Source: Laetmonice hystrix (taxonomy: Eukaryota). From it: a DNA stretch of 64,000 bases. Shown here in pieces: positions 5,377 through 58,186 of the stretch; the first letter of the stretch is position 1; the number at the start of each line of letters is the position of its first letter. The position numbers were made by a program, and so were the translations under genes. Below the pieces are notes generated by a model. It had not been told where the DNA came from. It saw only the letters and a list, made by a program, of their open reading frames with translations, and searched no databases. The stretch is taken from positions 12,400,001-12,464,000 of the forward strand of contig OZ249445.1 in assembly GCA_965235115.1 (NCBI GenBank). Direction: 5' to 3'.

Positions 5377-6482
5377 CTTTAGTTGCTACGGTTTGACGCT
5401 ACTATAAGGGTTTGTCTTATAAAATTTTAATTTATCAAGCCTCCTGACCCAGTAACTGCATGGTTAGGTATGTACGAATAAAAAAATGGCGACATGTATG
5501 CACAGGTCTTTGACTGAACGAACCCTTCAACTCTGACTGTGTAAACTTTCCAACCTGTACAAGGTGTAAGGATATTTTAAGTTAATGTTGAGTCCAAGGT
5601 CTGATGGCAAGTAAGAGGGCACTGTCTCGAATTACGTAGTGTTGCCAGCAACAAGTCGAGTCATTACGTCACACATTTTCTAACCAACTAATTCCACAAT
5701 CGTTTGACACACTGCCAATCCCTCTCGCCCTCACCCCTCCTCCATTCCCAGCCCTGACAGCCCCTACATTCTGAGCCCTTTGCTGAATGTATAATTGATA
5801 TGATGATTTGTTGCCTCATTCAATATGTCAGCCCTATTTTCTCAGCACCACCGCTTATAACTGATATGGTGAAAGAAAAAGTTTGTAAAATTCCTTTTGA
5901 TTCAGCACCACCTATTTGGCAACGATCAGGGGTTAAGTAATTTGGTCCTCAATGCCTTCAACACGATACGGTTGACAAATACTGGTAAAAGTTCACCCCA
6001 AATCTGGCTCTACGATTTTGGTTTGGCTATAACTTGTAAAGTTTCCTCATATGAACATAGTAGAGCAGTATACAATATTTTGATAAATTATTACAATTGG
6101 TAAACTGCAGCACTAGTCAAATTATAAATATATGCTTTTATCATAAATGATACATATAATGGTCACTAACTTCATGTTGACATATATCCAGATGATATCC
6201 TGGCTAAGATGACAGGTAACTAACTTCATCTTACTCCTATTTCAATGTTCTGCCTATAAACACTAGATAAGTTTTAATAATTACGTTAACTTTAACACTA
6301 AAAACCTACAGTCAAATTGTCCCCAGGAGTATGACCACATTACAATAACTACCTTACACAACACACTGACACACTTCATTGATGATGACCTAGTGGTCAG
6401 TGGAAGAACCATTCATTTGGCTGACGTTCACACCAGCACCCTCTAGTGGACGGTGGTGACGATAAGACGACCACAGAGTCTC

Positions 6483-9400
6483 TCAAACCCGGTTCATCTC
6501 AGTCTCAGGAATACTGAGCTGTCGGTAGAAGGGATAGTGAGGTGCATACTCAAGACGCCCTCGTGTGTATTCAGAATCGCCCTCTTCAGCAATATTGATT
6601 TTCCGGCGTGCATATTCTTCATATGTAGGGGGTGCTGGAAGGTCAAAATTTAACCTTTTAAATCAGTTAAACATCTAATTAATTCAGAGAAAATTGGTGG
6701 ATGATAAAGTCATCTTCCACTTTTTCTGATAAACTATACGTGGAAAGTATCAGAGAAGGATCACATTATTTCTTACTGACCTACATATTATGAATGCAAA
6801 CAATTTGGAAGAAAACTTAGCCACAGGTTTTTTTGATTTTGAAATTTCTTCTGTCTTACGCAGAGCATATGCAGGTATCTCAGCGTCTGGGGCCCCAGGA
6901 GCCGAGGGTTGGTTTTCAACGACCATCATGGAGCCTGGTGCATACTGGACTCCATAACGTGGACTGAACGCATCTTGTAGAGGGATTGTTCCAATGATAA
7001 CCTCACTCGCCAGCTTGATATCATTGCCGTAATTGACTGATGCATAAAACTATATAAAAAGACATACCCTTATGTACTTGGAGTATCCGCACAAACACAA
7101 CAAGAGAGGTTTGGGTTAATTATTTAAGGGTTAAAAAACCACGATAACAGAATCCTTTGATACTTCCCTCGAAGTGCTCCACAGGTGGGGAATAAAAGTA
7201 CTGTAATATCCAGCTAGACTGGGCAAATAAAAGATTCCTGTCAAGCAGATCTGATCATCGCATCTTCACCTGACAAAATTTATGTTATAACAAGCAACTC
7301 CCCAAGGAAGTATCTAAGAAGTCTGCATGGAATAAAAGTATTATGTGTGGCTGAAACAGGAAATTTTACTGGGAAAACTAAACGATGCTGTGACACAATA
7401 TGGAATAGGAACATACCGGTACGTAACCTAATGCCCTTCTTTGTAGTTCACAATGATCACCCAAGGTTATCTGAAGGATCCGAATAGACTGGGCAATGGT
7501 CGAGTCCCTGCGATGACAACCACACTCACCTTGACAACATACGTACAGTTGATGATGTTACATCCCACCAGTCTTGAGGGAGGCACCGCTGGGATGGCCA
7601 GCGCAACATTATCCCAGATACATGACTGGCCCGCTGCAATCTCACCCCGACAAACCTGACCAACCAGGTCCTTCTCTACTCGACTCTTCAGTTCACCCGA
7701 TGAAAAAACCGAGTCTGATTGTCCCAGGAACTCGGTATACTGTTATAAAAAAAAAATTCTTTTTTCAAATTTGTCAGAGTCTCTCAAGAATTATCTTATA
7801 CCCAATAGATAACTTAAGTTATTTGAAAAATACGAATATCAATAATAAATTTGTATAGATACCAGAGAAAAAATAGCAGCTTTACCTGTTTAATTGCCAC
7901 AGCAGTTGAATTGACAGTAGTATTGCTTTTGTTATGAACCTCCGCATACACAATAATAGGTTCCCCAGGAACAAATCCTCGTTTGTTGATACGAAACATT
8001 GCAGATATGTCCCCAGAATAGCAGCAGCAGCATGACACTTCAGTACTATCTTGGCCCTGCATAGCCGTCTGTGCAATGGAGTAATGGTAATATTGCATGG
8101 ACAATTAAAGAAAAGGTAAAGCAAAGGTAGATGCAAGTCAAGTAAAAAATATGTTACAAAAAATGGGAAAAAAATATTTCAGATCTCGAATATGTTCAAA
8201 GTCTATTCCAATACTATATTTTACAGATTCTACACAATTCAACATAGAGTCAATAATATTTCTGAGTACTGCTTTTCATTCAATAACATGAACTGTCAAT
8301 ACAATTTGTGTGACGACACTAACCCGAAGTGCCTCAGGCTCTCCATTCAGGTCCAATCGACTGAGAACCGTAAACGCAGACTTCACATCATGATCAAACT
8401 TCCAAGGTTTGTCTATTGTTGCTTTGCAGCAGTAGCGGACATAGCCATGCTCGCCTTCAAATGACGATGGCAAGTCCTGAGCCAGAGACACCTCAAAACG
8501 GTACGTGTGGGTTCCTGCTGGATGAAGTTCTCCATCTCCCTCCACTAGAACACAGCAAACCAAATCTAAATCAATAAAATCACAAAGTCAAGTCAAGAAT
8601 AGCTTATCAATATCTGAGCGCCACTCCTGAACAAACACTAGACATCCTTTCACCAAACCCCTTAATGTTCTCATTGTGTCAGAATTCAGAGGCTAACTTC
8701 AATTGGAGGTATAAAAAGGTAAGAGTTTACACAAGTACTTGGCAATACAACATTTCTTATTATCAAGGTAACTATTTTAACAATCTAGTAAAACAGAAAG
8801 ATTTATTTTCAAACAAAACATTCCTTACAACTTATGCAGTAAGATGCATCACCAAACCTGACTTATTGACGATAAACTAACTGGAGTACAAACAAATGAC
8901 AGCACTGAACAGAAAGGTAAATTAAATTATATCAGAAATAACTACTGATTTACAATGTTTTCCTCTTTCTCTTTGGCAACTTTATTGGACACTAAACTTT
9001 CAGATATAATGAAATAGCATCTTAAATTATCTTAACTGAAAACATAAATAACCTGTACAGACAACAAAACTAACTTAATATATTTGAACAAAAGACTACA
9101 GAAAAATGGCATGCAAAGACACTTAATTCTAAATTATTAGCTAACAATTATATACAGTTACAAAACGTTTCCTGTACTTAGGTACAAATATACACTGTAC
9201 TAGTAGGTGTTATTTCGCACGTGAGAAATCCAAAACCGACACACTTGCCTATGAATTATAGTATTACTGATATATATCATTTCTAGCTTAGTCTGGTAGT
9301 TTCCCGTGCATTATTTAACAGTCAACCTGTAAAACCACCATCATTTCTACATGTGGCTAACTGTACGTGATGACTAAACCTCATGTCTCATGTGGTGACT

Positions 9401-12400
9401 ATTACTCCTTTCACATGAAAGTAAATCTGCCTTATGAAATCATGCGACCTGGAACTTAGCCATATACTGAAGTAATTTCCACATGATATAATGGTTGCAG
9501 ACAGCATTTCTGCATTCCGAGTCAATCTCTCTCTTACTGACACCTGGGATAGTTTCACATTTTTTGTCGGGTGAATGGTTATTCACTAATAGTTATGCAA
9601 CACTGTCTGAGGAATAGGCAGACACAAAGCTATGAAGGAAAGCTTTTTTAAAATAGTGTAAGTACGAATATGGGAACGTTCTTCAAAATTAATACACAAT
9701 TCAACTCCCCATATACAAGAAAATCAAATTTGATTTTGCATCCTTTAGTTATAGATCTTAGTGCTTAGTGCTATACTTTTTTCTTTACAGGGCACATCCC
9801 ATACACGCCTTGGCAATCAGTAAAGTGAAGCACTCATATTTGCTGTGTGTTTAAAGATAAAACACATGCCTACAAACTACTATAGTGGAATAAAAAAATG
9901 TTTTAGATGCTTTTGTGATAGTGGATTTTTATCATTTTTATATTCTTTTAAGAAAAAAAAGAATTTCAAAGAAGCAATCTTATTAAAGGGGCGGGGAGCG
10001 AACATGCAATATTACATTACAAATATATTAGAAGTTAGAACAGGACTAGGCAATGTAAGATCTTAATGAAACAAACAACAAAAATTCAACAAATTTGTGC
10101 TTTCTTCAAAAATCCTAGCCAATTGGAAATCTGTAATTATGAAATCTTCATAATTATATTAAAGGACCCGGTCTCGGTACATATTCCAATGGGGGGATCT
10201 CTGCCCAACAGGTGGCGCCACCATGTAACTGTCAACATCCATTAACCTACAGCCTGCAGTGGTTGTGGCCTGGAAACTCATCATGCTTGGTGTCCTATTC
10301 TGACCTGGCACAAAACCTATCCTGCGGCAGCCTTAACCCCTGGGCATCAGGCATCTCCACATGGCCGGCCCTCAGAGCAGTTTCCAATTATGAGCTCGGC
10401 AAATTTCATTTGGCAAGGCCAGCTGGGGTCAGGCGTGACTATATGGATGACCATCTCAGGTCCAGTTGGCAAATGCCAACACGGCAGAGCTGCACTGGAC
10501 GGAGACTGGTGACTCATTGGCTCTACAGCAGTGTGTAGGAAACGGGTAGAGCTGGTACTAATGTTGGGGCTCAGACACTGGGGAGGAACTAATATTAGAG
10601 GCAGTGCTGTAAGCAGACTAATAACTAGCCCCACATTCTACTGTAGCATATCCAGATAGGCGCTGGAACTAAAGTAAAGTCGTGTTTATAGACAGGTGAC
10701 TTCCTGGTACTACATGATAAACTGGGGCTACAAAAGTGTATGCACACTGAGTTCTCAGATTAAAATCTTGGGGTAGAAAGGTGTCTCTGCACCCTGTACA
10801 ATTGTTATCAGTGAGGTGAATGAAACGTGTTTACTCAAGAGAGTGAGACATTTGCTTGAGAATTTTCTAATTACCAGGCCCAGTACTGTTATGAATTGAT
10901 TGTATGATACCAGGGATTGGATACACACTTGGCTGTAGTTGAAAAAATAAGTGGCCCATGTTTTTAAGAGAATCAGCGGGGAAAAACACGATTCATGGCC
11001 TAAAACCTCACTGTGACAGTCTTATCCTTTTTTTCTGGTTTTAAACAGTCAGCCATTGTTTGAGGACCACACTGGGCATTTGTCCAGGTGAAATGACCGA
11101 CCTGCCTGACATTCTGCGTGCCAACTGATGCAGGTACCTTACTCATCAGGTGCCATTCTACCATGGTCACATGACACTCAGCGACAAATTATTTACCACT
11201 TCTTCAGGTATTATATTATGTCAGACTATAAGAATACCCGGTGAACAATGTTCACATGTTTGGTGACTTTACATTAGGTCCATGTGACCCCTGTCTTGGC
11301 AGCTAGTTGACCTAGTTGACCTACAAATTTAAGACTTAAATCTTAAAAAGATAGGGTTGAGTGTCTTTTAGTTTTGATCAATTTTTATACTGTAAAGTAC
11401 CATCATCCCAATTTTCGACATGAATTCACATATCACTGGTACTGCTTCTAACTAAAACTAGAACATTATACAGGGTGCAAAGCAGGCGCTCGCTACTCGC
11501 AAAAAGCGTGTGGCGAGTGCACTGGGCGAGTACCCAAGTCGGTGCACTGGTCCGTACTATCGAGTGCCAAAAAATGGGCAAAAAACGTTAGGTACCCTAA
11601 AAACACCTGGCCTGTCTGAAATCTGCAAGGTATTTCATCTAAACGACAAGTGGGGAGTGGAGGAAGTTCTGTCTATAAGTGAAATAATTAGGCCTACCTC
11701 TATCCGTAAAACCTTTGGGATATTATAATAAAATTCAAATAATTATTTAAATCGGGGGATTTGGCACTATCTAGGTTGGTGTAATTAATAAATCTTAATT
11801 TATGTAAATATATGCGTTTTTTACATTCTCAAAGCCAGATATTGCAACCATACAGACCAGTGTTGACCAGTACGGACCAGTACCTCCCGAAGTGCACTGG
11901 TCCGTAAAAGCAAGTACTACCCTATTCTCCCCTGCAGGTTAATACCAGTTCACATGAAAGGTCAATTCAACTGATTTCTATATTTCTGTAATTTCTACAG
12001 TCCCAGTATTTACTGACTAAGACAAAATGAGCTTAGATCAGCCACTGTCATTTAGTTGTCTGAGGTAGTGGTCCACATGACCAGTAAAAATTAGTTCTCA
12101 ACTTCTGTGTAACTCAACCTGGTAACTTAGTGTTAAGAGGTCAACTAGCCAAGCCACTGGAGGCTTGTAACACAAAGTTAACAACAGTTGGGGGTCTTCT
12201 TGCTTCTTTCATCAAAGTCTTAAATATGTATTACCAAGTCCAAGTCATTGCTTAGATTTGATGATATTAGCCATCTTCTGAAGTTTTGGTCTAGTGATTT
12301 CTGCTGGTCAAGTCCCAGACTTATATTACAGACTTATCTCTGTTCACTGAATTCGCTACTAATACTAACTCAGAGTAACTGTATCCTTTAGAATCTTTAT

Positions 12401-14164
12401 GGAAACTGTGGTGCAGAAAACCAGTGCTTTACAAGAAGACAAGACCACTCAAAGGAGAGCCAGTTCAGACATTAATAACCAGGGCATAGTTCTGCAATTG
12501 TCTGATAATCTCACTTTATTTATTATGATCTTAAAACACTCAAAAATCTGGTTGTCCTTTGGCTTTGGTAGAATCTAAATTCCGATGATGCAAACAAAAG
12601 ATTTAACTAACTGTACATAATTTCACAGTACCAATTCATAGGCATGAAGGCACACAACCAGTGTTACCCAAAGCACAGCCATTGACAGATAATGCCTTTG
12701 AATTATGCCCTGTATTTCTCTGTTCTACCAATTCTTGAAACCTACCTCAACCAAAGTAGCAATGACTGAAATATTGTGCCATAATCTAGAACCTAAAACA
12801 CTGACTGGCTGCATATCATACCACCAGTGTCAAGTCCATCAACTGATATTGGAATATTGTCAAGAATTAAAAGCAAACGAAGGAAAATAAGACAACTAAT
12901 GAATTAGTGTGTCAATTAACCATTCTAGCAGATCCTGGAGCTTTTCTCATGACAGGTTTGGGTGACTTTAGAACCTGTACATTATGTGTGGGAGGGGGCG
13001 ACTTTAGCCATTTGCTTAAAACCTGAAGTAGGGAAATCATCACTTAACGTCTTCCCAAACTTTATCAGTAGAAATACTGGATTCACTGGAAGCAGTCAAA
13101 AATGGTAGTGAAGAAACTTTTTCAGGCCATTGCACAATTCAGGACAAACGGTAACAAAGTCAAGCTGCACTTGCTTACATCATACCAATGGAAAAAATTT
13201 CTGAATGCACTTACAGGAGCAGGAATGCTTGGGCGTTGACTAACCTCTAGATAAATTATGGACATGGGGAATCAAAAAATTGGGGAAAAATTAGGATCAG
13301 TTAACTTCCTTTGACCAAAAACAAAATTAAGAGCTCTTTGGAATTACAAAGCCTTAAAAATACTTTAAAGCCAATATGAATATTTGGTTGATCAGGGCAT
13401 AAAAACACATTTTGCAGTTCTTCAATATCAATGAGCCCTGCTTGCTATTCTTAAAAATGGATGGAAGAAAAAATTCTTTCAACAGAACCTGTACACAAAT
13501 GAACTGATCGCTAGGTTTACATTTTTAAAAAGTTTCAATAAAACGAAATTATACATGGTAATAACATTCATAAAAGGGCTAAAAACTATTAAAATGAAAT
13601 AAACTTGTTCAAACACGACAACTGTCACCTTGCTATGTCTCTAATGTGCACTCTCAGCTTTTGAATTTAAAAAAATCTGACAAAGCTCATAAGAAGTTCT
13701 ACTTACATGAGCCAAATACAATAAATGTTTTGTCGATGTAGACTTCCTCTGATCGGTAGTGAACAGTACGTCTGCTGTTTCCACTTCCTTTGTGCACGTC
13801 CCAGTGCACCTTTGCCCGACCACTGAACCAGATGCGCAAATCTGTAGGACAGAAAATAATCATGACAGACAGACTTTAGTTTAAAAGAGGGATATTAACA
13901 ATTTTCAGATTTTTTTCATGTTCTTACATCAGTCAAAGCCCAGCAGTTTTTAACTTTGGACCCCAGCATAACTTATGCGAAAACTAAAATCATATCTACG
14001 GACTTTAAAATTTTTGTTGACAGTTTTTTTTTATAGAAATACTTACTCCTCATCTTCATTGGTTCACTGAGGGTCATGAGTACTGACCCTTGGACCACTT
14101 CTCCAGCATGGAAAACTCCCAGAGGATGATCATAAATGATGTCAAACTCCTGTAGTTTACCCAT
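6483..14164 (-). CDS. ARRDC: Alpha-arrestin (arrestin domain-containing protein, ARRDC2/3/4-like), ~402 aa, 7 coding exons
   Basis: Exons (minus): 14164-14047, 13841-13707, 8544-8324, 8068-7886, 7739-7530, 7049-6860, 6634-6483. All introns GT-AG, phases 1,1,0,0,0,1, total 1209 nt. Arrestin_N motifs (GEVVQGSV, GRAKVHW, HTYRFEVSLAQDLPSSFEGEHGYVRY, KPWKFD); Arrestin_C motifs (KRGFVPGEPIIVYAEVHNKS, IPAVPPS..GCNIINCTY, VIIGTIPL); C-terminal PPPTYEE (PPxY). Confidence 0.93.
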
Positions 14165-44700: not shown

Positions 44701-44738
44701 GAATCTTCCCCACATCACGAGGCCTCGTTCCCAAATAG
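35791..44738 (+). CDS. KIF3B: Kinesin-II motor subunit KIF3B / KRP95, ~755 aa, 21 coding exons
   Basis: Exons: 35791-35793 (ATG only), 36022-36113, 36406-36513, 36727-36851, 36994-37118, 37264-37347, 37629-37708, 37918-37987, 40641-40733, 40863-40995, 41186-41273, 41386-41564, 41732-41874, 42145-42237, 42357-42461, 42804-43042, 43305-43418, 43601-43706, 43844-43983, 44152-44205, 44645-44738. All GT-AG, in frame, 2268 nt. P-loop GQTGTGKT, switch I SSRSH, switch II DLAGSE, KIF3B-type [26 protein letters not shown], neck [20 protein letters not shown], tail [10 protein letters not shown]. Confidence 0.96.
42578..42745. mobile_element. MITE (GGG...TTCACTAA TIR family) in a KIF3B intron
   Basis: GGGTGTGTTTCACTAA / TTAGTGAAGCGCACCCC; internal AAAGAC(G/A)TCTTT palindromic sub-repeats. 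Confidence 0.65.
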
Positions 44739-47215: not shown

Positions 47216-50045
47216 TTTACTTAGAACAGGCGACCAACTGGTCTCCGCAAACAACTGTGTAAATCCATGTAATTAGCATGTCTTTTGTAGAGCAGTGTCC
47301 ATCTTTGCTACTGTTAAGGTCCCTAGGAATAGGATTCTTACAATACAGGCAATGTAGCAGACATGTTTATGTCTCAAGCCAATATTGCCAACCAGAAATA
47401 GCCAATTTGTTTCTAACGTAAAATTGCCCTGCATCATTGGTATGTACAATAGTAGTGTAACGTGTTATAAAATGTGAGCTTTCAGTCACTTGTGTGGCTC
47501 TCAAGAATATTGGTGGCAGTAAAAACGGCACATTAGCATTTTTTGCCAAATAGCAAGTTTTGCCAATGTTTGTTTTTGATTGAAGATTATATTATACCCA
47601 GCGATTTTGTCATGGGCATGTACATAGCAGGAAAACGACAGTAATAACCCCAGAGGTAAACATCTCCCACGTATTCTGTCGTAAGTCATGAAACAAATAA
47701 AACAAAATATGAGGAAGAATAACCTCTTAGAGAAACCAGGTGGAATGATCCTATTGAAATGTAAACACTCCTTGCAGTTTACTGTATAATACTAGCAAGG
47801 TCCGCTCCCCACTGTGTCTGGTGGAGTCTGAATTGTCTGTCACTACATGCTGTACATAGGCTACAACACACATTTACTGGGTATATACAGATAAGCTACG
47901 TAAATGGACGTTGTTGGGTGAGCGCCTTATAATTGCCATACTCCTGCATAATGAGGTTTTCCGTTCAGACAAGCCTCAAGTCAGTTTGATGGTCTGTGGA
48001 GGGCAAATAGAGAATTAGTCACAATTTCATTGAATGAATCCTAAACTGGCGTAGGACGACAGAAATGCCCTTCATAACACCCAAGCTGCCTTCCAAGATC
48101 CTTCTCGGACACGAGAGGATTAGGGTAAATATGTGTGGCGAAGGCAGAAAGGAGGTTTTGTTGCTTCTTTGGCCATTTCTATATGTACGAATACTGCCAG
48201 AAAGGGTTATGGCGCGTGATTAGTTAGATAAGCCCCCTCAAACACTTGGTTGTGTTTGAGTTTATTGTGGATCACTGGATTAATTTTAGAATCGTGTGTC
48301 TTGTCTCTGGCCAGGACTGGTTACTAAGAACGTGAATAGGTTCTATGCTGGTTATAAACGACACTTTTACCAAACTTTGCTAGCATGCTTGTTGATAATA
48401 TCAGTAATCCTGTTAACATACCTCGTCAGGAACAGCATGGCTGTTGTTACCAGGAGTGAAAGGCGACCAAGCTTTATAACACTTCTTTCATCCAGGCCAG
48501 GCCAACTGTTTGAGATGCAGTCAAACTTCATATTATTTCCATGGTGTCATGTGTTGCAGTGTTAATCTACACATCTTGGTCCTGTTTAATCCTTGTGCAT
48601 GATCTCAGAGCCTCAATAAAAGTGAGAAATCCTAGTGAATGTAAATCCATATTTAACTGTGTTTCTTTTGTGTCCGGAAAAAAGGCACTGCATAAGTCCC
48701 TTAACCTAATAAATCAAAACTTCAACAATTCTGAACAAGAGATGGCCCTGCCCAAGATCTACAAGGCATAATGCTAATATTGATGTACATTTGTACATTC
48801 ATCAGACATGCAACCGATGAGATTTGAAGGCAGTCAATGTTTGGATTGTGTTTATTTCATATTTCTAGTGGACTGTAGAGACAGAAGAATCCACACCTAT
48901 TTTGTGAGCATAACAGAAGAGAGTGCCAATGTCGATATCAGCTCAACACCAATTTAGATTATCCAGTGGTGTTGTAAGGTAGGAATGCTTCTGATGGTGA
49001 TTGACCCCATCCTCATACTACCTTGACAGATAGGATGACACGCTTAATTTGAAATGCTCTTCTAGAAGACATTTCTATGCCAGGGCAAAATAAATTTATA
49101 TCCCTGGTAACTGTTCAAAAATAAGCAAAACCACAAATGGTTATACCCAAAGTATCCTCAAAGATAACTTTCAGTGTAAATATGTACTACTGTACTCTGG
49201 AAGTATTCCTCGACTACTGGACCCACCAGTAATCGATCCCAATACATTTGTATTAAGAAATTGCATCTGCAGTAGTACCGTAACTACTGGTATGTAGAAT
49301 GTCTTGATTAATGTTGAGAGCTAAGAAGCCTCCAGCCTTCTAGGCAGTACTACTGCTCATATTCTTTCTCCCAATCACAGCCGCTTGTCATCAACGATGG
49401 GTTTCAATATACATGTACTCAGTGTCCCATTTCTCATTTTGCATCATTTGTACCATTGCACAATTTTAATTTCAATATTTTCCCCATTTAAATCAAATAT
49501 AAATTTAGATTAAGGCGAAGTGAATTTTACACCATTATGAAACAATTCCTGTCATGTTAAATTGTTCTGCTTTATAATTGGGAATGTGCCTACACATGTA
49601 TGGTGTACATTAACAGGTGCACCGCCATGAACACCATCATATCAAAAGCATACTTCTAGCAATAAAAAGAAACTTGTAACCCCTGTCCTTTAGACCATTC
49701 ATTTCATGTGAATTATCCTGTTTAAAAGGTTCATTAAATTTGAATCATTTAACTCATTCTGTTACCCAGCTGTATCCAAACAAGTCTTGTGAACACAAAA
49801 AACCAGGTGACAATTTTTAAAAGCCTTCAAAAAATTATCCTCATGTTCCTCGGATTGAAGTTTACAATACACGTACATCTTTAAAATCTAGGTCCAACTA
49901 CTATGGCCACGGCAATGTCTTGATTTCATTATTACAAATAGAATTCAGAAAGAAAGAACAAAAAAGTGACAGCAAGACCCAGTGGCCACACTGCCTGGAA
50001 ATGCATGTTTCCTGGGCTTAGAGCTGGCTTGGTGCCTGTGAAAAG

Positions 50046-53000
50046 TCAACTGTTGGGTGTGTTCTGTCGCAAGTTCCAGACTCGGCTAATCTTGGGTTTC
50101 GCTCCCATACAGACAATACGCTCTGCTGAGACACTGTCATACTCTGAACTCTCACTGCGAATATCAATTCCCATGTAGTAATATCTAAAAAGGTAAAAAG
50201 ATAGTCCTCAGGTATACATGGCGAGGACTAGGGGCAGAACAATTCACTGTAAAATTGGTGCATCGACAATTCAGAGGGCATGATCGTATCCTAAGTATAG
50301 TATCGTAAAAGGTCATTTTGAAGAAACTGATCAAAATACAAGCCAAATTAATGATTCTAGTACATGTTTCCACACAGGTTTCATAGGCTACCCTCCTGCA
50401 TTGAAATGTATTCTGACATTTTGTTTACCGGTAATGTTATTATACATGTGGTTCATGATATATTTTATCTGAGTTCTGCATCACATCTTTGAGTTCATGT
50501 TATTCTTTTTGATAGAGAAGTGTCAACAGAACAATAACTGTAGCTACAATACGAATTTATTTACAGATTATAACATATTTTTAGAAGACATACGGTAAAT
50601 GAACAAATGATACTTTCTTTATGTATGTGTAAAAGAATTATATCGTGAATCGTATCATGACCATGCGCAATACATATTGTTTCACACAAAAATCTATCAT
50701 TCCACCCCTAGAGAGGACATGCTTTGTTTACCTCTCTTAGTCATAATCACATAAGAATTAGAGCAGAATTTTGAATAAAGTGTAATGACCCTATGAAAGA
50801 TGGGTATGCTACGGTATGATACGGTATATCACAATTATGGTAAAATGGAATTTTCAAAATCTATAGATACTTCTCTAACCGTTCAAGGTAACAGGTAAGC
50901 AGGTATGCACAGCAGATTCACATCATTCAGTGAACTGGAGATGGTAGGGATAGTAAAGGTGAAAAGGGTTTATAAAAGGTTTATAAAAGATATACTACTC
51001 ACTTGGATTCTCCCCTTACTCCAAGCCTTCTCATTATCATATGGGAGAACTTCTTGAGTATCATCTGGAAGTCAAAGCATTTGTGCATATGTTCTTTTAC
51101 TAACATTCTTTCAAAGCATGTCACAAACAATTCCTTCCTATAGATAGTCTAATTGTCCTTAATTTAAATACACATAGTTTTATTATACATTTACTCACCT
51201 TGCCAAAAATAGCATGTGTTGCAGGAACAATGGAGCGACGTTTACAGAAACTGATATAATGTGCGTACACTGAGGTCCGTAGGAGGCAGTTAAGGGGCAC
51301 AACTTCATACTCGTTCTCAAGCCTAAACACAAATAAGATGTTGCCATAAATATTACCGGTACCTATCTCTTCAAAAGGGATGCTGCATTGTGACACATTC
51401 ATGATGATTCAAATATACTCCTAACTGCTGGAGTATACTTTCCTTACAAAATTTCTACAAAACTGTAATATGAAGTGCTTATGAGCACAACTAATTATGT
51501 TCCAATCCTAAGAAGGCCTGTGATTTCTTGTTTTACAAACACAAGTTTTCTTCGGCACAATAGATATAAGACATTTCCTCAGGAGCTGATCATACCACTC
51601 AAGGGTGGCTTCCCAGTGAGCTTGTTTCTCTGAGGCTGACAACTTCTTCCAACTTGTTACAACCGGTTGTGTCATTTCCTCCACATCTGATGAACAGTCA
51701 ACAAAGCATGGCCTTTTTGCTGGACTTTCTTCATTCTGAAACAACCAAATATTATGTAAACAAGATAATTAAATTTACCAACCATAAATATACAAAGCCT
51801 GTTTCATAAAAACTATTATCCCAACTACAATAAGTCCTGAAGATATATTTTTCGTGCTCGTCTCCATTTTTTGTACTATTTTATTGTGGTTAGAAAGTCC
51901 AAGGAACATCTTGAAAGAGTTACCTCTACTTTTGTATGGTCCACCCGTCTTCCTTTTGCAACAGTATGATATTCTTCAGAGGAGTCAAGAATGTCAAGAC
52001 CAGCATAGTAGTGGCTGCAAAATCCGAGAACAAATCTCACTTTTAATTTCAGGTCGAGCTGTTAAATGAACACATACATGTAATTGTTTGTATAGAACAT
52101 TAGCAATTGAGGAGCATGGCATTTCCTTATAAATATAACTAAGACCTATTACTTTGTTCTGGCACTGGAAGCTCTTAAACTGTTATGTAATTCTGAGATT
52201 TTTGAAGAAGTTACATCTTTCCAGTGACTTGACCTCTTTAACTAAGACAAAGACTCTGTAAATTTACTGTTAGATAATTCCTCGCCATAACTGAAGATAG
52301 CATTTTTAATACTCACAAGCTCTTTCCACGTTTACGCAGGTTTTTCAGTCTAACATTCGGATACTTTGTCAGAACCATCTGAAGAATTTAGACGGTTTAG
52401 TAAAAGAGGTATACATGGCTTCAAATCAAAATACTTGTTTGCCTCCCATTTGCCTGAATACATGATTCTACCAGTAGTATAGACTAATACTGCATGTACC
52501 TATGTATCAAATCTACTCTTCCATTATTGTATACAATTTTTTTTCTCACAATTACTCAAAAGGCATGCTAGAAACATTAATAATGAATGACCTGAAAACT
52601 TAGCACACAATTTATATCAAAGTACGGTACTATCCTTTTACAGGCAACAGAGGACCAGCAATAATGTGATTAGAATTGTTTTTCTTCTTCTGTGCCAGGT
52701 TTAGTTAACCCTTTGGACCCGATTGGCCAAATTTCCAGCCAAAGTACATAGTACAATACCAATTGGCCAGTTTTCTGGCCAGCTCATTAAGCTTAATTTG
52801 ATGGCCAGAAAAAAAGTCCGGATATATAGTCATTATGATAAATAATGCTTCAGGGTTGAAAGGGTTAAATGATAAAGAGATGAGATTATGATCACAAAAT
52901 TAGTTTACCCTACCTTAGAGAAAGTACAATTAGATGCAGTTATCTTCGAACACTGTGAGGAGTAAAGCACATAGTGTTGATGGACAAGCTCCCGCAACAA

Positions 53001-54439
53001 TGAGACATTCGCTTCTTCCTTATAATTCTCCTCTAACCTACAATACCAAAACATAAAAATACCACAATCCACAGTGAGGGACATTCTTATATTTTAGATT
53101 TCAAACCAAGCCTGTTGCCCACCAACAACTGAGTTGACTTACTTGACCACAAAATATTTATAAATAATTAAAACCTGTGCTTATACTGGCTTATCATCAT
53201 GTATTACAATACCTCAATAGGAAGATAATAAAAATGATGACCGTTTATTACAACAAATCTTACCATTTATTGACTTTTTCAGTGTGTTTCTTCTTTTCAA
53301 TGTTGGTCAGAGACTTCCAATCTTTCGGGAAGCCACTTGATGTATCTTCGTCTGATGACATCTCTGAATTCTAAAAAAAAAGTAGAGATGTAGAGCCAGT
53401 CAATTTCCACGATCACGGAATCGCGGATGGAATCGCGGAAATTACTATCTGAAACAGAATTTTCTATCTGAAAGCCTGGCAGAGTGGGAAGGGAGGGAGG
53501 CCCAGCCGATTAGAGCTCGACCTCGGCCTCATTAAAAGCTGTGACCTGCCCCCTCCTCCCGTGGGCAGCCGTTACGGCCGGCGGCCTATTAATGCACCCA
53601 CTGGAGGAGTGGAGTGGGAGGGTCATGAATATGCTCAAGCTCTTTTTAGAGTGAACAGACTGGACTCGCAAATGTGACAGGTGTGCAGGTATGGTTGTTC
53701 ATTTTTGTGGGACACCCTGTATACTGAGAAAATACTGAAACAAAAAAAAACACGGAATTTTTAAAATTCAAGCAAACAAAAAATGGAATTTTTCATTTTC
53801 AAAACGGAATTTCCTGGCAAGGATCACAGAATTTGACTGGGTCTAGAGATGTTTTGGGCTACTTGAGATCTGCCTTTCTTTAATAAAGAACTTTAAATTT
53901 TAACAGGGATTTCTATTCAGAAACTAATTTGTTATAAACTTACTCCTTAGACTTAGTTAGGACGGGACTATTTATACGGGACTGTTTGGTGTGGATCTCG
54001 TTAACTTGACATGGCCTTGGGCTTGGCCTGCCAACCACAGGCACAGGTCTAACGTTAGTCTTAGACTTACTAAGTCACTTAGTGCCAACCAAGTTTTGAG
54101 GCCATGCGGCCATTCTCTTGTGTACTGGCCTAGACCAAAGCCAGGCTCAGGCCCAGCATGCCCAAGTTGGGACCCCTTCTTTGTTACCAGGCTGGACAGA
54201 CATCAAATCAGAGTAAAGACGAGGGAGAGAGCGGGCGTTTTTTCTTACCGTGGCCGTTGACGCGTGACAACTGACACTGACAGCCGCTCTCACTCCAGTC
54301 ACTGACACCAGACTGTCTCACTCTCAGTCTCACTCAGTCTCAGCGAACCCAGATAATAAATGCTGAGGGAGTCTGACGGTCACAAATCTCCAGACTAAGC
54401 CAGTCTATGATATATTTTTACGATGTCTACAACTGCCAT
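50046..54439 (-). CDS. Protein with two tandem RFX-type winged-helix DNA-binding domains, ~288 aa, 9 coding exons
   Basis: Exons (minus): 54439-54422, 53370-53264, 53037-52914, 52378-52317, 52014-51924, 51735-51596, 51322-51199, 51064-51003, 50184-50046. All GT-AG, in frame, 867 nt. Domain 2: WLENEYEVVPLNCLLRTSVYAHYISFCKRRSIVPATHAIFGK-MILKKFSHMIMRRLGVRGESKYYYMGI, vs recalled RFX consensus WL..NYE..EGVSLPR..LY.HY..HC......P.NAASFGKLIR..F..L.TRRLGTRG.SKYHYYG. Domain 1: WLEENYKEEANVSLLRELVHQHY...TFSK-MVLTKYPNVRLKNLRKRGKSFHYYAGL. The start exon and C-terminus are less certain. Confidence 0.82.
52709..52864. mobile_element. piggyBac-type MITE in an intron of the RFX-domain gene
   Basis: TTAA on both flanks (52705-08, 52865-68); termini CCCTTTGGACCC / GGGTTGAAAGGG. 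Confidence 0.75.
53392..53844. mobile_element. Non-autonomous DNA transposon with target-site duplication (hAT-like if 8 bp)
   Basis: TIR AGAGCCAGTCAATTT / AATTTGACTGGGTCT; AGAGATGT on both flanks (or GAGATG if the ends are taken as TAG..CTA). Contains a mariner-like terminus TTTGTGGGACACCCTGTA near 53703-53720. Confidence 0.8.
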
Positions 54440-54730: not shown

Positions 54731-57700
54731 ATGACGAAACCACTGACGGTTGTAAGTATATTATATAGTTAGGGAATGATTTTGTCTGTTTCTTCGCGTA
54801 TTTCTATTTTTATATGGTTTATTTCCTGTGGTCAGTCGAGGCGTTGACCACGTCCCGACCGACCACATGCTGATGTGATGAAGCGATGATGGTGTGTTGT
54901 CGGTGCAGCACTGCCATGCCCGACGTAAACAACCAGATGCTGAGGCATGGTCTCGTGACTGTGTGTTGGTAGCCACCGTAGCATCCTTAACCGTGATAAG
55001 GTATACTATATAATAAGATTAACGTTAACATTTTTTTAAAGCTGTCATCGGTCACATTTTGTTTGGTGTTTAGTGAAGCCTGATGACAGTGTTACTGTTA
55101 CTTAGTCTTAGTGAATGACATTGACAGTTGATTTGTTGAGTCAGGGATGCGAATGGTTTGTCTGATTTTGCGCGTTAGGCCAGCATCATGAGCCGTATGT
55201 GGGCCCACTGCGGCACTGGCAATGGCCACCATACGCCACGGCACTGGAAGCTGAAGCTGAAGGTCGCTTGAATCAGACTAGTCAGCTCGTGAATAGGGAA
55301 GGGCCAGTGGCAATCAACCTGACTCTCACTAGATCTCGTGACAACTGCTGAATCAGACTCGTAAAACTATTCACTTCGCGAGTGACTAATTACTACTAGT
55401 AGTAGTAGTAGGCCTAATACAAATTAAAATACCGGGTCCGGGGGTAACATTAGGCCTATACTAGCACTAACAGTAACAGACTAGTAATTTACGAGAAGTA
55501 GCAGGGCGGATCTAGGGTCTACATTCAGGGGGGGGGGGGGGTCCGAGGGGAGTCCAGCATAAAAAAGGCAAATCGGGGGGGGGGGGGTCCGTTGTAAAAG
55601 CAATAAGGCATGTTGGTTAAAAAAATTTTTTTTAATTTGGCAAATTTGAAGGGGGGGGGGGGGGTCTGGACGTCGCCGACACCGCCCCGGATCCGCCTAT
55701 GAGTAGAATTATTTGAAGTCCTTAAGCCACCCTGACACTTGCATGATTTTTGTTCCCGCAATGCCACGCACTTCGGTGTGCCAATGATTAAAGTCTTTGG
55801 GAACGAGCATGAGGAGTGTGTGACGGGTGCGTGGGTGCAGGGCATATCGTAGAGAGAATTTCAAAATGTTCAAAAATTTGGCACGCATCAATGTTCGTGC
55901 CATGTGCGTGCCACTTGCATGAACCATACGTGAACACTGCAAAGTTGTGAAATCGGTGTGAACACCATGGTGAACACTGCCGACAGTCTGTCTAGCTACA
56001 CTGAAATGTAGCCCTGTGGACGCACTTCGGTTGAGGGGTAGGTAAGTGAGCCTACCTGTACTAATGACATTGACTTCAACAGTAGTGCCATCTAGGGTAT
56101 CACTGACACTGTAATTTAATTTTTTTCCTGGGGGAGAGCCCCCCCCCCCCCCCATCATGGCTAAGGGGGAAACCCCATTCGACCAAATTCCTGGATCTGC
56201 CTCGGACTGCCAAGCTTGTGCCCCGACACGCAGAAATTTCTAGCTACGGCCTTGTTGATATGTGCATATGCCACTTTTATTTGACTGTTTAGGGCCAGGC
56301 TACTCACTGGGGGGGGGGGGGGGGCATTTGAGAAAGTGCCCTTTTTCCATAGCACCTCCCACCCCCGTCTTGAAAATCCTCGATCCGCCTCTGATGTGCC
56401 GCTGAGCCCACCCAAAGTTTAAATCTGGTTTCTATCTAAGCTGCCAAAGTTAACTGCTGTCTGAAAATGAGTTATTCAGGAATTTAATGCTCGCCCACTC
56501 GCTAATGGCGAGTTAAAGCTCTGTTGGGCGACCATGTCTGACCATTCAGGGCGACCTACTGCGATTTGTCTAAAATGATCACACGAGGGAATTTTTTTTC
56601 CTGCAATCGCCTGCTCCCACAATGGCAGTCATAACGATACTACCGTGTACCGTAATGTATTTGGCAGGTTGGCATTGAGAGGCAAAGACTTAGAATCTTC
56701 AGTAGGTTCTAAGTTCTCCAGTTGCACAATTTGAGAACTTCTACCGCCACAAGACAGCACCTTCTACTGTACCGATTTCTGTGGTTGGAATGGCTAGTAG
56801 GTGATTTTCCCCAATTTCCACCCCTGGTTATTCAAAGCACAATCAGCTAGGTGTTGTGACATGGTCAATGTATAATGTATTGAGTCTATACCCAAACCCA
56901 AACCAGTCCAATTCTTACATTTCCATGAATAAATTATTTGGCTAATTATCCTCAGAATAGGCTGCCAGTTGGCAGAATGAATCAAGAATAGATGGAAAGC
57001 TTATTACGGCTATGAGTATGATGGCAGGTTTGTAGGTATTAATTCTGGTGAGACACTGAAGCCAGATGTGGCATGAAATATTACTTTGAAGTGAATGCTA
57101 TTGAACAACACTTGTTTTAAGTTTGAAAATTATTTTTTGCATGAAGGTGGAAGGTGACTCAGTAGGCTTTGGACTGATTCCTTAAACCAAGGTTTACAGA
57201 TGGTATTGCATACCTGTCAACCATTCCGATTTACTGTACTTGCAATCGTTCCGATTTTCTTGTTTCCAGATATAGCAAAAATCAGAACCTTCAGATTTTC
57301 AGATCGCAAAATATCATCAAATAATGTCAAATTTGATATCAGTTTGACACGTATGGCAACTATACTGCCATTTTATGACCTGATGTGAATAAAATTTGGC
57401 ATAATTAAATTATTTGACATTAAATGTTATTTACGGTTAGATTTGTTTAACCATGTTTCTTATCAGAATGTATATTTTATCTTTTTACAGTTCAAGTCTG
57501 TTGGGCCAAAATTGGTGCCATTCTTCAAGACAGTGACTATCTTCTTTGTGTTGTTTGGAGAGGACTCCAAACTTGACTCACTCATCTACTGTGTCTTCAA
57601 GTGCCTTCCGATAATCTCACTCATGATCTTCGTTCTGCTGCATGGTATGAACTTCTCAGAAGCATACGCATATTCAAGGAAAATCCTGATTGGTCTCGTG

Positions 57701-58186
57701 TTCAGTGCTCTTGGTGATGCCTGCCTCGTCTGGAAGAACAACGGGTACTTCCTGCCTGGAGTGGGAATGTTTGGCATGGCACAGATCATGTATGCATTTG
57801 CATTTGGGTTCACACCACTGAACCCAATTGCTGGAGCTGTCATTTCAATGATTGCTGGCACGATATTCATGGCTATCCTGCCGGGACTGAAAGGCATTAT
57901 GGTCTACGTTGGGTCCCTCTACTGTTTGATGATCTTCATGATGTTGTGGCGCGCTGTTGCTCGGGTTCAGATCTTTAACGATCTCTGGACCTGGACCAAA
58001 CTGTGCAGCTGTGCTGGTGCCATCCTCTTCGTCATCTCAGACTTTTTGATTTCATTTGACAGATTTGTCATGCCAGTACCCTACTCGCATCAACTCATCA
58101 TGGTAACGTACTACGCGGCCCAACTTGGAATCTGCCTGTCGGTCGTAGACAGCCAGGTGGATCATCTCCTCAAGAAGACTCAGTAA
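54731..58186 (+). CDS. TMEM86A: Lysoplasmalogenase-like protein TMEM86A (YhhN family), ~238 aa, 2 coding exons
   Basis: Exon 1 54731-54751 (MTKPLTV|GTAAGT), matching recalled human MVSPVTV. Exon 2 57491-58186 (ttttacag|FKSVGPKLVPFFKT...KCLPIISL...GLVFSALGDACL...GA.LFVISDFLISFD...TYYAAQLGI). Multi-pass hydrophobic. Confidence 0.92.
55502..55701. mobile_element. CAG..GCGGATCC-terminus short element; further fragments to ~56400
   Basis: CAGGGCGGATCTAG / GGATCCGCCTATG with internal G-runs and 5-bp direct repeat AGTAG. Additional ends GGATCTGCC (~56190), CTAGCTACGGCC (~56240) and GATCCGCC (~56382) in TMEM86 intron 1. Confidence 0.6.

What the first reader, a model, noticed from the sequence alone, without database searches (positions are those of the whole stretch)
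50046..54439. Hidden gene encoding a small protein with two tandem RFX winged-helix DNA-binding domains
Seen: nine GT-AG exons splice into one open frame of about 288 aa containing two RFX-type DBDs and nothing resembling the B/C/dimerisation regions. The ORF track shows only fragments of it. Established: classical metazoan RFX factors (human RFX1-7, C. elegans DAF-19) carry one DBD and bind X-box palindromes as monomers or dimers. Inference: two covalently linked DBDs could occupy both X-box half-sites as a single chain, or act as a competitive or dominant-negative regulator of RFX/ciliary programs. The residues after each DBD (GIDIRSESSEY, GLDILDSSEEY) recall RFX4/RFX6 (GIAVKESSQY/GIGIKESSAY, from memory), suggesting a truncated derivative of that subfamily. 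I do not know of a described animal family with this architecture but cannot search.
Basis: partly seen in the sequence, partly recalled or inferred. Interest (0 to 1): 0.85.

Follow-up and report, generated by a model that had tools for sequence, protein, structure and literature searches.

The report
Mini-RFX gene with duplicated DNA-binding domain
A small, previously unlisted animal gene carries two copies of the RFX DNA-binding domain and none of the usual RFX partner-binding regions, but the only RNA data available show just its second half being transcribed, so the two-domain protein is plausible and not yet proven.

Summary
On the minus strand, eight GT-AG coding exons (53361 to 50046) splice into an open 279-aa frame with two RFX-type DNA-binding domains: DBD1 at residues 33-112 and DBD2 at residues 172-251. 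No B/C/dimerisation region is present.

The locus is an ancient tandem duplicate of a whole ~140-aa DBD-only unit. That unit derives from the RFX4/6-like paralogues of the same genome, which share the same 124-nt and 62-nt exons and intron phases. The two units are joined by a donor inside the old last exon of copy 1.

A cDNA-like contig from the genome's own sample confirms the four 3' introns, including this fusion junction, and runs through the stop codon into the 3' UTR. This rules out a conventional long RFX.

The same contig starts inside the intron before exon D. Exons A-C, which encode most of DBD1, have no RNA coverage. The two-DBD protein is therefore inferred (about 0.5). A DBD2-only product of 134 aa is the main rival.

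DBD2 keeps the DNA-reading wing. DBD1 has lost five invariant wing residues, so symmetric occupation of both X-box half-sites is unlikely. The likeliest role is a DBD-only X-box binder or competitor.

I reached no database relatives and found no description in the literature searched.

The parts
54249..54439 (-).
   Evidence: A GTAAGA donor follows 54249. The exon cannot code, because stops lie in the relevant frames. It has no RNA coverage. Unverified.
53264..53370 (-). Exon A: 9 nt of leader, ATG at 53361, 32 codons plus TG of the Trp codon (phase 2)
   Evidence: Splice sites and frame. No RNA coverage. One synonymous SNP at 53329.
52914..53037 (-). Exon B, 124 nt: helices 1-3 of DBD1 (LEENY...TFSK)
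   Evidence: Pfam RFX_DNA_binding 18.1 bits at profile positions 8-48. Same size and phases as exon F and as paralogues L001-L003. No RNA coverage.
52317..52378 (-). Exon C, 62 nt: altered wing of DBD1 (MVLTKYPNVRLKNLRKRGKS)
   Evidence: Five invariant wing residues are replaced. Synonymous SNP at 52355. No RNA coverage.
52015..52106 (-). Intron sequence that forms the 5' end of the only RNA contig. It may be an alternative first-exon extension or internal start. A TATAAG motif lies at 52131-52126.
   Evidence: The X4 contig ends at 52104 plus 2 further letters. The rebuilt isoform 52106..49911 is exactly 783 nt, the contig's length. Sequence.
51924..52014 (-). Exon D, 91 nt: end of DBD1 (FHYYAGLDILDSSEEY...). 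Its donor lies inside the former last exon of copy 1.
   Evidence: The joint 51735|51924 is present in the RNA contig..
51876..51885 (-). Vestigial end of copy 1: AATAAA at 51885-51880 overlapping the in-frame TAG at 51878-51876. It now lies inside intron D-E.
   Evidence: Sequence. The read-through tail aligns with the tail of exon H.
51596..51735 (-). Exon E, 140 nt: linker plus pre-DBD2 segment. The former start codon of copy 2 is now TGT (51696-51694). The first downstream in-frame ATG is Met146 (51675-51673).
   Evidence: Both flanking joints are in the RNA contig. Homology of the exon A and exon E tails.
51199..51322 (-). Exon F, 124 nt: helices 1-3 of DBD2
   Evidence: Pfam 27.9 bits, at or above the 27-bit cut-off. 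RNA joints. Synonymous SNP at 51277.
51003..51064 (-). Exon G, 62 nt: intact wing of DBD2 (MILKKFSHMIMRRLGVRGES)
   Evidence: Pfam 15.5 bits at profile positions 50-68. RNA joints.
50046..50184 (-). Exon H coding part: end of DBD2, a 30-aa tail, and the TGA stop at 50048-50046
   Evidence: The RNA contig runs unspliced from 50184 through the stop to 49911.
48830..50045 (-). Probable 3' UTR. Minus-strand AATAAA at 48856-48851.
   Evidence: X4 contigs lie on 49911-50184, 49565-49832, 49222-49512 and 49138-49251. A further contig laid from 49000 has about 172 more letters, reaching to about 48828. PAS positions. Contigs carry no strand, so assigning them to this gene rather than to the convergent kinesin is tentative.

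Best explanation
This is a real, lineage-restricted 'mini-RFX' gene.

Origin (inferred from structure):
- An RFX4/6-type gene was copied on the same chromosome and reduced to a unit of about 140 aa. That unit held a short N-terminal peptide, one winged-helix DBD split over the family's 124-nt and 62-nt exons, and a 30-aa tail.
- The whole unit was then duplicated in tandem long ago; synonymous sites are saturated.
- The second copy lost its ATG (now TGT) and has no promoter of its own.
- It is read by splicing from a donor 15 codons before the old stop of copy 1 into the acceptor of its first exon. The junction is in frame.

What is shown and what is inferred:
- Shown: transcription, the four 3' junctions including the fusion junction, and termination at the TGA in exon H.
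- Inferred: transcripts that start at the upstream promoter carry exons A-H and give a 279-aa protein with two DBDs joined by a linker of about 60 residues.

Likely function (inferred):
- The protein has no activation, B, C or dimerisation region. It most likely acts by DNA occupancy alone.
- DBD2 keeps the RRLGxRGxSKY wing and the H3 lysine, and should recognise an X-box half-site.
- DBD1 is still very basic but has a rewired wing. It would add non-canonical or non-specific DNA contacts, or a protein contact.
- The net effect would be competition with, or modulation of, the canonical dimeric RFX factors at X-box promoters.
For: - Gene model with canonical splice sites and an open 279-aa frame.
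- Two full-length DBD matches of 82.1 and 45.7 bits, against at most 8.8 bits in 2000 shuffles. Pfam matches exon by exon.
- Exon sizes 124/62 and phases are identical in both repeats and in paralogues L001-L003.
- DBD1 and DBD2 are sisters (96% support) inside the L001-L003 clade (98%). They share three derived changes at positions invariant in the five canonical paralogues (P->L, R->L, H->Y).
- Copy 1 (with its read-through tail) and copy 2 align end to end, 140 versus 141 aa, 46 identical. pS is 0.77 (saturated) and pN is 0.48. Copy 1 has therefore stayed open, with exact exon lengths, over a very long time.
- A cDNA-like contig carries the joints 50184|51003, 51064|51199, 51322|51596 and 51735|51924, all GT..AG on the minus strand. 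None of the three DNA runs shows them.
- There is no BCD_RFX match in the window.
- The visible coding SNPs are three synonymous and one non-synonymous, including synonymous ones in exons A and C.
- Truncated RFX7 forms lose transactivating function and inhibit wild-type RFX7 as dominant negatives (PMC13652738).
- In RFX1 the wing reads the major groove (PMC4333399).
Against: - The single RNA data set has no coverage of exons A, B or C, or of the 5' exon. Its contig passes the exon D acceptor into the intron and ends at about 52106, 25-27 nt after a TATAAG. The major transcript in that sample therefore cannot encode DBD1.
- An in-frame fusion has roughly a 1-in-3 to 1-in-5 chance of arising without selection.
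- Copy 1 still has its own stop and an AATAAA.
- DBD1 alone is below Pfam's cut-off when scored by exon.
- No orthologue could be examined, so conservation of the fused form is untested.
- All functional statements are inference.
Confidence: 0.5

Rival explanations
1. Only single-DBD products are made. An internal promoter in the intron before exon D drives the observed mRNA, whose main ORF starts at Met146 and gives a 134-aa DBD2-only protein. Copy 1 is either silent or makes its own ~140-aa DBD1-only protein ending at its old stop and AATAAA. The two-DBD frame is then an accident of an in-frame junction.
For: - The RNA contig spans exactly 52106..49911, and exons A-C have zero depth.
- A TATAAG lies 25-27 nt upstream of the contig end.
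- Met146 sits 7 codons after the former start codon of copy 2, with a purine at -3.
- Copy 1 keeps TAG at 51878-51876 and AATAAA at 51885-51880.
Against: - The observed leader holds seven upstream ATGs before Met146, which makes it a poor mRNA for that ORF.
- The contig end falls where the DNA-run contigs also break (52078-52140). It may therefore be a break in the assembly graph rather than a true 5' end.
- No unspliced or polyadenylated copy-1 transcript is seen.
- Contigs show presence, not absence, and only one sample is available.
Confidence: 0.33
2. The locus is a decaying relic. It is transcribed and spliced, but neither half makes a working protein.
For: - DBD1 is strongly diverged: it keeps 14 of 33 invariant positions and its branch is about 3 times longer than that of DBD2.
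- Both DBDs have lost an Arg (R->L) in helix 3 that is invariant in the five canonical paralogues.
- The observed RNA has many uATGs.
- No homologue was found in protein libraries.
Against: - There are no stops or frameshifts in 279 codons, although synonymous sites are saturated and pN is below pS.
- Exon lengths are exactly conserved.
- All splice sites are intact, and four are used.
- DBD2 keeps 25 of 33 invariant positions, including the wing.
- The visible coding SNPs are mostly synonymous.
Confidence: 0.12
3. These are the first exons of a conventional long RFX factor whose B/C/dimerisation exons lie further downstream.
For: About 5 kb lie between the stop codon and the last kinesin coding exon.
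Against: - The RNA contig runs unspliced through the TGA for 135 nt, and further contigs continue into a probable 3' UTR.
- No PF25340 match falls anywhere in the window, while five other loci match.
- The next gene is a convergent kinesin.
Confidence: 0.02

Closest known systems
RFX4/RFX6(/RFX8)-type RFX factors. In this genome these are the paralogues at C11:24.02 Mb (L001), C11:8.16 Mb (L002) and C19:4.05 Mb (L003). Naming them after the human genes rests on my memory of the human sequences.
   Same: - The winged-helix RFX DBD.
- The same intron positions and phases: Trp codon split TG|G, a 124-nt exon, a 62-nt exon, and the next exon starting at the Y-x-Y-x-G strand.
- The same 'S/T-S-x-x-Y' motif after the DBD.
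- DBD2 is 41/81 identical to L001. Two of the three paralogues lie on the same chromosome.
   Different: - There is no B, C or dimerisation region, and no long N- or C-terminal regions.
- The DBD is present twice.
- Both DBDs carry P->L, R->L and H->Y at positions that are invariant in the five canonical paralogues of this genome.
- The DBD1 wing is rewired.
Atypical E2F factors E2F7/E2F8 (PMC4686757)
   Same: They belong to a winged-helix family that normally binds DNA as a dimer, in which a tandem duplication put two DBDs in one chain. They act without the usual partner and repress. This is what the present gene may 'work like'.
   Different: It is an unrelated winged-helix family. For E2F8 the two-DBD binding mode is solved and the proteins are conserved and studied. 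Here neither the full-length mRNA nor DNA binding is shown, and DBD1 looks less competent than DBD2.
Truncated RFX forms that act as dominant negatives, such as RFX7 1-688 (PMC13652738)
   Same: They lose transactivating function and inhibit the wild-type factor. The mini-RFX here likewise has a DBD but no recognisable effector region, so it could lower the output of the full-length factors.
   Different: Those are somatic mutants of a long gene. This is a germline gene with an ancient, maintained ORF.
Nuclear receptors with two DBDs (2DBD-NRs) of flatworms and molluscs (PMC10497141)
   Same: A lineage-restricted invertebrate transcription factor in which the DBD was duplicated in tandem within one gene.
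   Different: A different fold (zinc fingers). Those proteins also keep their ligand-binding and dimerisation domain.

Membership tests
RFX family (Pfam PF02257 RFX_DNA_binding), DBD2 | Match to the RFX DBD profile at or above the curated cut-off of 27 bits | tested here: met
   Exon F alone scores 27.9 bits at profile positions 8-48, and exon G adds 15.5 bits at 50-68. The own-genome scan gives 29.8 bits. The local HMM gives 82.1 bits.
RFX family (Pfam PF02257 RFX_DNA_binding), DBD1 | Match to the RFX DBD profile at or above the curated cut-off | tested here: inconclusive
   Exon B scores 18.1 bits (E 0.004); exons C and D give no match on their own. The whole spliced domain could not be given to Pfam because it has no contiguous reference. 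The local HMM of five paralogues gives 45.7 bits over positions 1-80, against at most 8.8 bits in shuffles.
RFX family | Conserved DNA-reading wing (R-R-L-G-x-R-G-x-S-K-Y-x-Y-x-G) and helix-3 Lys | tested here: met
   This holds for DBD2, which reads RRLGVRGESKYYYMG with FGK kept. DBD1 does not meet it: it reads KNLRKRGKSFHYYAG (R->N, G->R, T->K, K->F, Y->H) with FSK. Wing-based recognition is taken from PMC4333399 and PMC2533330. I could not retrieve the exact list of nine contact residues.
RFX1-4/6/8 group (dimerising RFX factors) | B, C and dimerisation region (Pfam PF25340 BCD_RFX) | tested here: not met
   The six-frame scan of the genome finds BCD_RFX at five RFX loci and none in C11:12400001-12464000. 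The transcript ends after exon H.
RFX4/6-type subgroup | Shared intron positions and phases in the DBD, and grouping in a DBD tree | tested here: met
   The 124-nt and 62-nt exons have identical phases in L001-L003 and in both repeats. The clade has 98% support and the nearest member is L001. No human or other reference sequences could be included.
Tandem-DBD 'pseudo-dimer' factors (E2F7/8-like mode of action) | Both DBDs in one expressed polypeptide, both contacting DNA | not testable with these tools
   The D-E fusion junction is expressed, but exons A-C are not covered by the only RNA data. No binding data exist.

The most novel reading that the evidence does not exclude
The locus encodes a natural single-chain two-DBD RFX factor, the RFX counterpart of E2F7/8. 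It would be conserved in a clade of invertebrates, bind composite X-box-like sites without dimerisation, and act as a dedicated repressor or tuner of the ciliogenic RFX regulon. It might also bind X-box-rich repeats such as the foldback element noted elsewhere in this genome.
Probability: 0.2. Interest if true: 0.75.

Novelty: new variant of a known kind. Interest (0 to 1): 0.5.

Why it matters
RFX factors are the master regulators of cilia genes. All described members carry one DBD and, in the RFX1-4/6 groups, depend on a separate dimerisation region.

A maintained DBD-only gene, possibly with two DBDs in one chain, would be a built-in antagonist or specificity variant of that system. It would also be a second case, after E2F7/8, of a winged-helix family replacing dimerisation with domain duplication.

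The locus is also a clean worked example of how a tandem gene duplicate becomes a domain duplicate. The start and stop of the ancestral unit are still recognisable, and the fusion junction is seen in RNA.

If only the DBD2 product exists, the finding shrinks to a lineage-specific mini-RFX. That would be of modest interest.

Tried and rejected
- HMMER search of exon B against 1.84 billion representative proteins. The only match was a spurious repeat protein (P0001). Neither the gene's own product nor canonical RFX proteins reached E 0.001 with a 41-aa query.
- Word-index search of exon F inside its 95-aa open stretch (candidate proteins of 52-166 aa). No candidate was found.
- The search for related loci on metagenome contigs.
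- PDB sequence search with exon F. The only relevant match was 1DP7 (hRFX1 DBD) at E 0.68, useful for numbering only.
- Both sequencing-run searches found a single study. No run is on record as RNA. X4 turned out to be cDNA-like, and X1-X3 are DNA.
- X-box motif scan of the window gave one full match at 5641, no more than the shuffled expectation. I dropped the idea of local X-box enrichment or autoregulation.
- Literature searches for a two-DBD RFX found nothing.
- I tried to name paralogue L001 through a reported 406-aa open frame. No such frame exists in the DNA fetched.
- Steps left out: Pfam on the whole protein, database searches with the full length, and AlphaFold of the spliced protein. 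The spliced sequence has no contiguous reference and I did not type it into those tools.
- I did type the seven 81-aa DBD strings into one script. They should have been rebuilt from coordinates.
- Earlier scan notes near this place: none.
Full report
**What is there**

The feature lies on the minus strand. Three-frame translation and anchoring of splice sites give eight coding exons. Each has an AG acceptor behind a pyrimidine tract and a GT donor:
- A 53370-53264 (ATG at 53361)
- B 53037-52914
- C 52378-52317
- D 52014-51924
- E 51735-51596
- F 51322-51199
- G 51064-51003
- H 50184-50046 (TGA at 50048-50046)

The spliced frame is open for 279 codons. The window has no N.

**Two RFX domains, beyond chance**

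- Pfam RFX_DNA_binding matches single exons at the expected profile positions. Exon F scores 27.9 bits (cut-off 27) at positions 8-48, exon G 15.5 bits at 50-68, and exon B 18.1 bits at 8-48.
- The spliced protein has no contiguous reference, so I scored it locally. I used an HMM built from the five canonical DBDs of the same genome.
- That HMM gives two full-length matches: 82.1 bits for residues 172-251 (DBD2) and 45.7 bits for residues 33-112 (DBD1). The best of 2000 shuffles scores 8.8 bits.

**Not a conventional RFX**

- A six-frame scan of the 627-Mb genome with BCD_RFX (PF25340) finds the B/C/dimerisation region at five other RFX loci. It finds nothing in this window.
- The downstream neighbour is a convergent kinesin whose last coding exon ends near 44735. 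The upstream neighbour is a divergent YhhN-family gene that starts at 54732.

**Origin**

- The genome has about eight RFX DBD loci, and this gene is single-copy.
- Three paralogues (L001 and L002 on the same chromosome, L003 on C19) share its DBD gene structure exactly. The Trp codon is split TG|G, followed by a 124-nt exon and a 62-nt exon. The next exon starts at the Y-H-Y-Y-G strand and is followed by a 'T-S-x-Y-Y' tail. From memory of the human sequences these are RFX6-like (L001, L002) and RFX4-like (L003).
- In a maximum-likelihood tree of 81 DBD positions, DBD1 and DBD2 are sisters (96%). They sit inside this clade (98%), nearest to L001. The DBD1 branch is about three times longer than the DBD2 branch.
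- Both domains share three derived changes at positions invariant in the canonical paralogues: P->L, R->L and H->Y.

The duplication covers more than the domain.
- Copy 1 is exons A-D read on past the exon D donor to an in-frame TAG at 51878-51876, which overlaps an AATAAA. Copy 2 runs from a TGT codon in exon E, at the place of the old ATG, to the TGA in exon H.
- The two copies align end to end: 140 versus 141 residues, three one-residue gaps, 46 identities.
- The ancestor was therefore a complete DBD-only gene of about 140 aa that was duplicated in tandem.
- Synonymous differences are saturated (pS 0.77) and non-synonymous differences are lower (pN 0.48).
- Copy 1 has kept an open frame, exact exon lengths and intact splice sites over that time. 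This argues that it was under selection for most of its history.

**RNA evidence**

- No run is on record as RNA. One small run of the genome's own sample (X4) behaves as cDNA.
- One 783-nt X4 contig carries the joints 50184|51003, 51064|51199, 51322|51596 and 51735|51924. All are GT..AG on the minus strand, and none appears in the three DNA runs.
- These are exactly my introns G-H, F-G, E-F and D-E. D-E is the junction that fuses copy 1 to copy 2.
- The contig continues unspliced through the stop codon to 49911. Further contigs reach to about 48830, just past a minus-strand AATAAA at 48856-48851.

The 5' side is the weak point.
- The contig does not splice at the exon D acceptor. It runs 92 nt into the intron and ends at about 52106. 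My reconstruction 52106..49911 is exactly 783 nt.
- X4 depth is zero over exons C, B and A and over the putative 5' exon.
- A TATAAG lies 25-27 nt upstream of the contig end, which fits an internal start.
- Against that, the DNA contigs also break at 52078-52140, so the end may be an assembly break.
- The resulting leader holds seven upstream ATGs before the first in-frame Met (Met146, a 134-aa DBD2-only ORF).
- Contigs show presence, not absence, and there is only one sample.

**Domain competence**

- Of 33 positions invariant in the five canonical DBDs, DBD2 keeps 25. These include the wing RRLGxRGxSKYxYxG and the helix-3 Lys.
- DBD1 keeps 14. Its wing reads KNLRKRGKSFHYYAG, with R->N, G->R, T->K, K->F and Y->H.
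- In RFX1 the wing reads the major groove and helix 3 touches the minor groove (PMC4333399; nine contact residues are mentioned in PMC2533330, though I could not retrieve the list).
- DBD2 should therefore still recognise an X-box half-site. DBD1 remains very basic but probably does not read the canonical half-site.

**Most likely mechanism**

- The gene makes DBD-only RFX protein(s) that act by occupying X-box-like DNA without activation or dimerisation regions.
- They would compete with, or tune, the canonical factors. Truncated RFX7 does this experimentally (PMC13652738).
- If transcripts from the upstream promoter exist, the efficient D-to-E splice seen in RNA predicts the 279-aa two-DBD product. 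Its architecture parallels E2F7/8 (PMC4686757).
- I put the two-DBD product at about 0.5 and the single-DBD-only alternative at about 0.33. I put a non-functional relic at about 0.12 and a conventional long RFX at about 0.02.

**Novelty**

- Full-text searches found no RFX with two DBDs.
- Protein-library searches with single exons found no relative, and did not find the gene's own product either. These searches are weak, because only 41-aa pieces could be used and no related animal genome was available.
- I file it as a new variant of a known kind: an RFX4/6-derived, BCD-less mini-RFX with a duplicated DBD.

Noticed in passing
window:53380-53975: The first intron of the gene holds a dispersed repeat. 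The own-genome search returned 82 matches at about 80-93% identity from 916 first-look candidates. DNA-run depth is 8000-14000 against about 50 nearby, and the repeat is also present in the cDNA-like run.
   Followed up: partly
window:36000-44735 (+): Multi-exon kinesin gene (motor domain 66.5 bits). By eye it resembles a kinesin-II/KIF3 subunit, which is a ciliary motor. It lies tail to tail with the mini-RFX gene. No X-box was found near it.
   Followed up: partly
window:54450-54760 and 57443-58186 (+): A YhhN-family (TMEM86-like) gene scores 142.5 bits and starts at 54732. It diverges from the mini-RFX gene across a GC-richer stretch of about 300 bp that holds a TGACGTCA palindrome. Its first exon has no coverage in the cDNA-like run.
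   Followed up: partly
L004 (G000:C6:1956631-1956774): A further very divergent RFX-DBD-like exon (30.5 bits, one TAG inside) with no BCD match nearby. It may be another atypical or decayed RFX copy.
   Followed up: no
window:49000-54950: Heterozygosity is high, about 1 SNP per 100 bases plus small indels between the assembly and the contigs of its own sample. One indel is a 38-nt insertion at 51394-51396, in the intron between exons E and F.
   Followed up: no
window:24000-34000: A GC-rich block (GC 0.46-0.51 against about 0.38 elsewhere) has long Gly/Pro-rich open frames on both strands. It looks like low-complexity or repeat sequence.
   Followed up: no
G000:C2:18044648-18045039: A copy of the same dispersed repeat sits inside the RFX1-3-like gene of this genome, among its BCD exons. 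This is probably coincidence.
   Followed up: no
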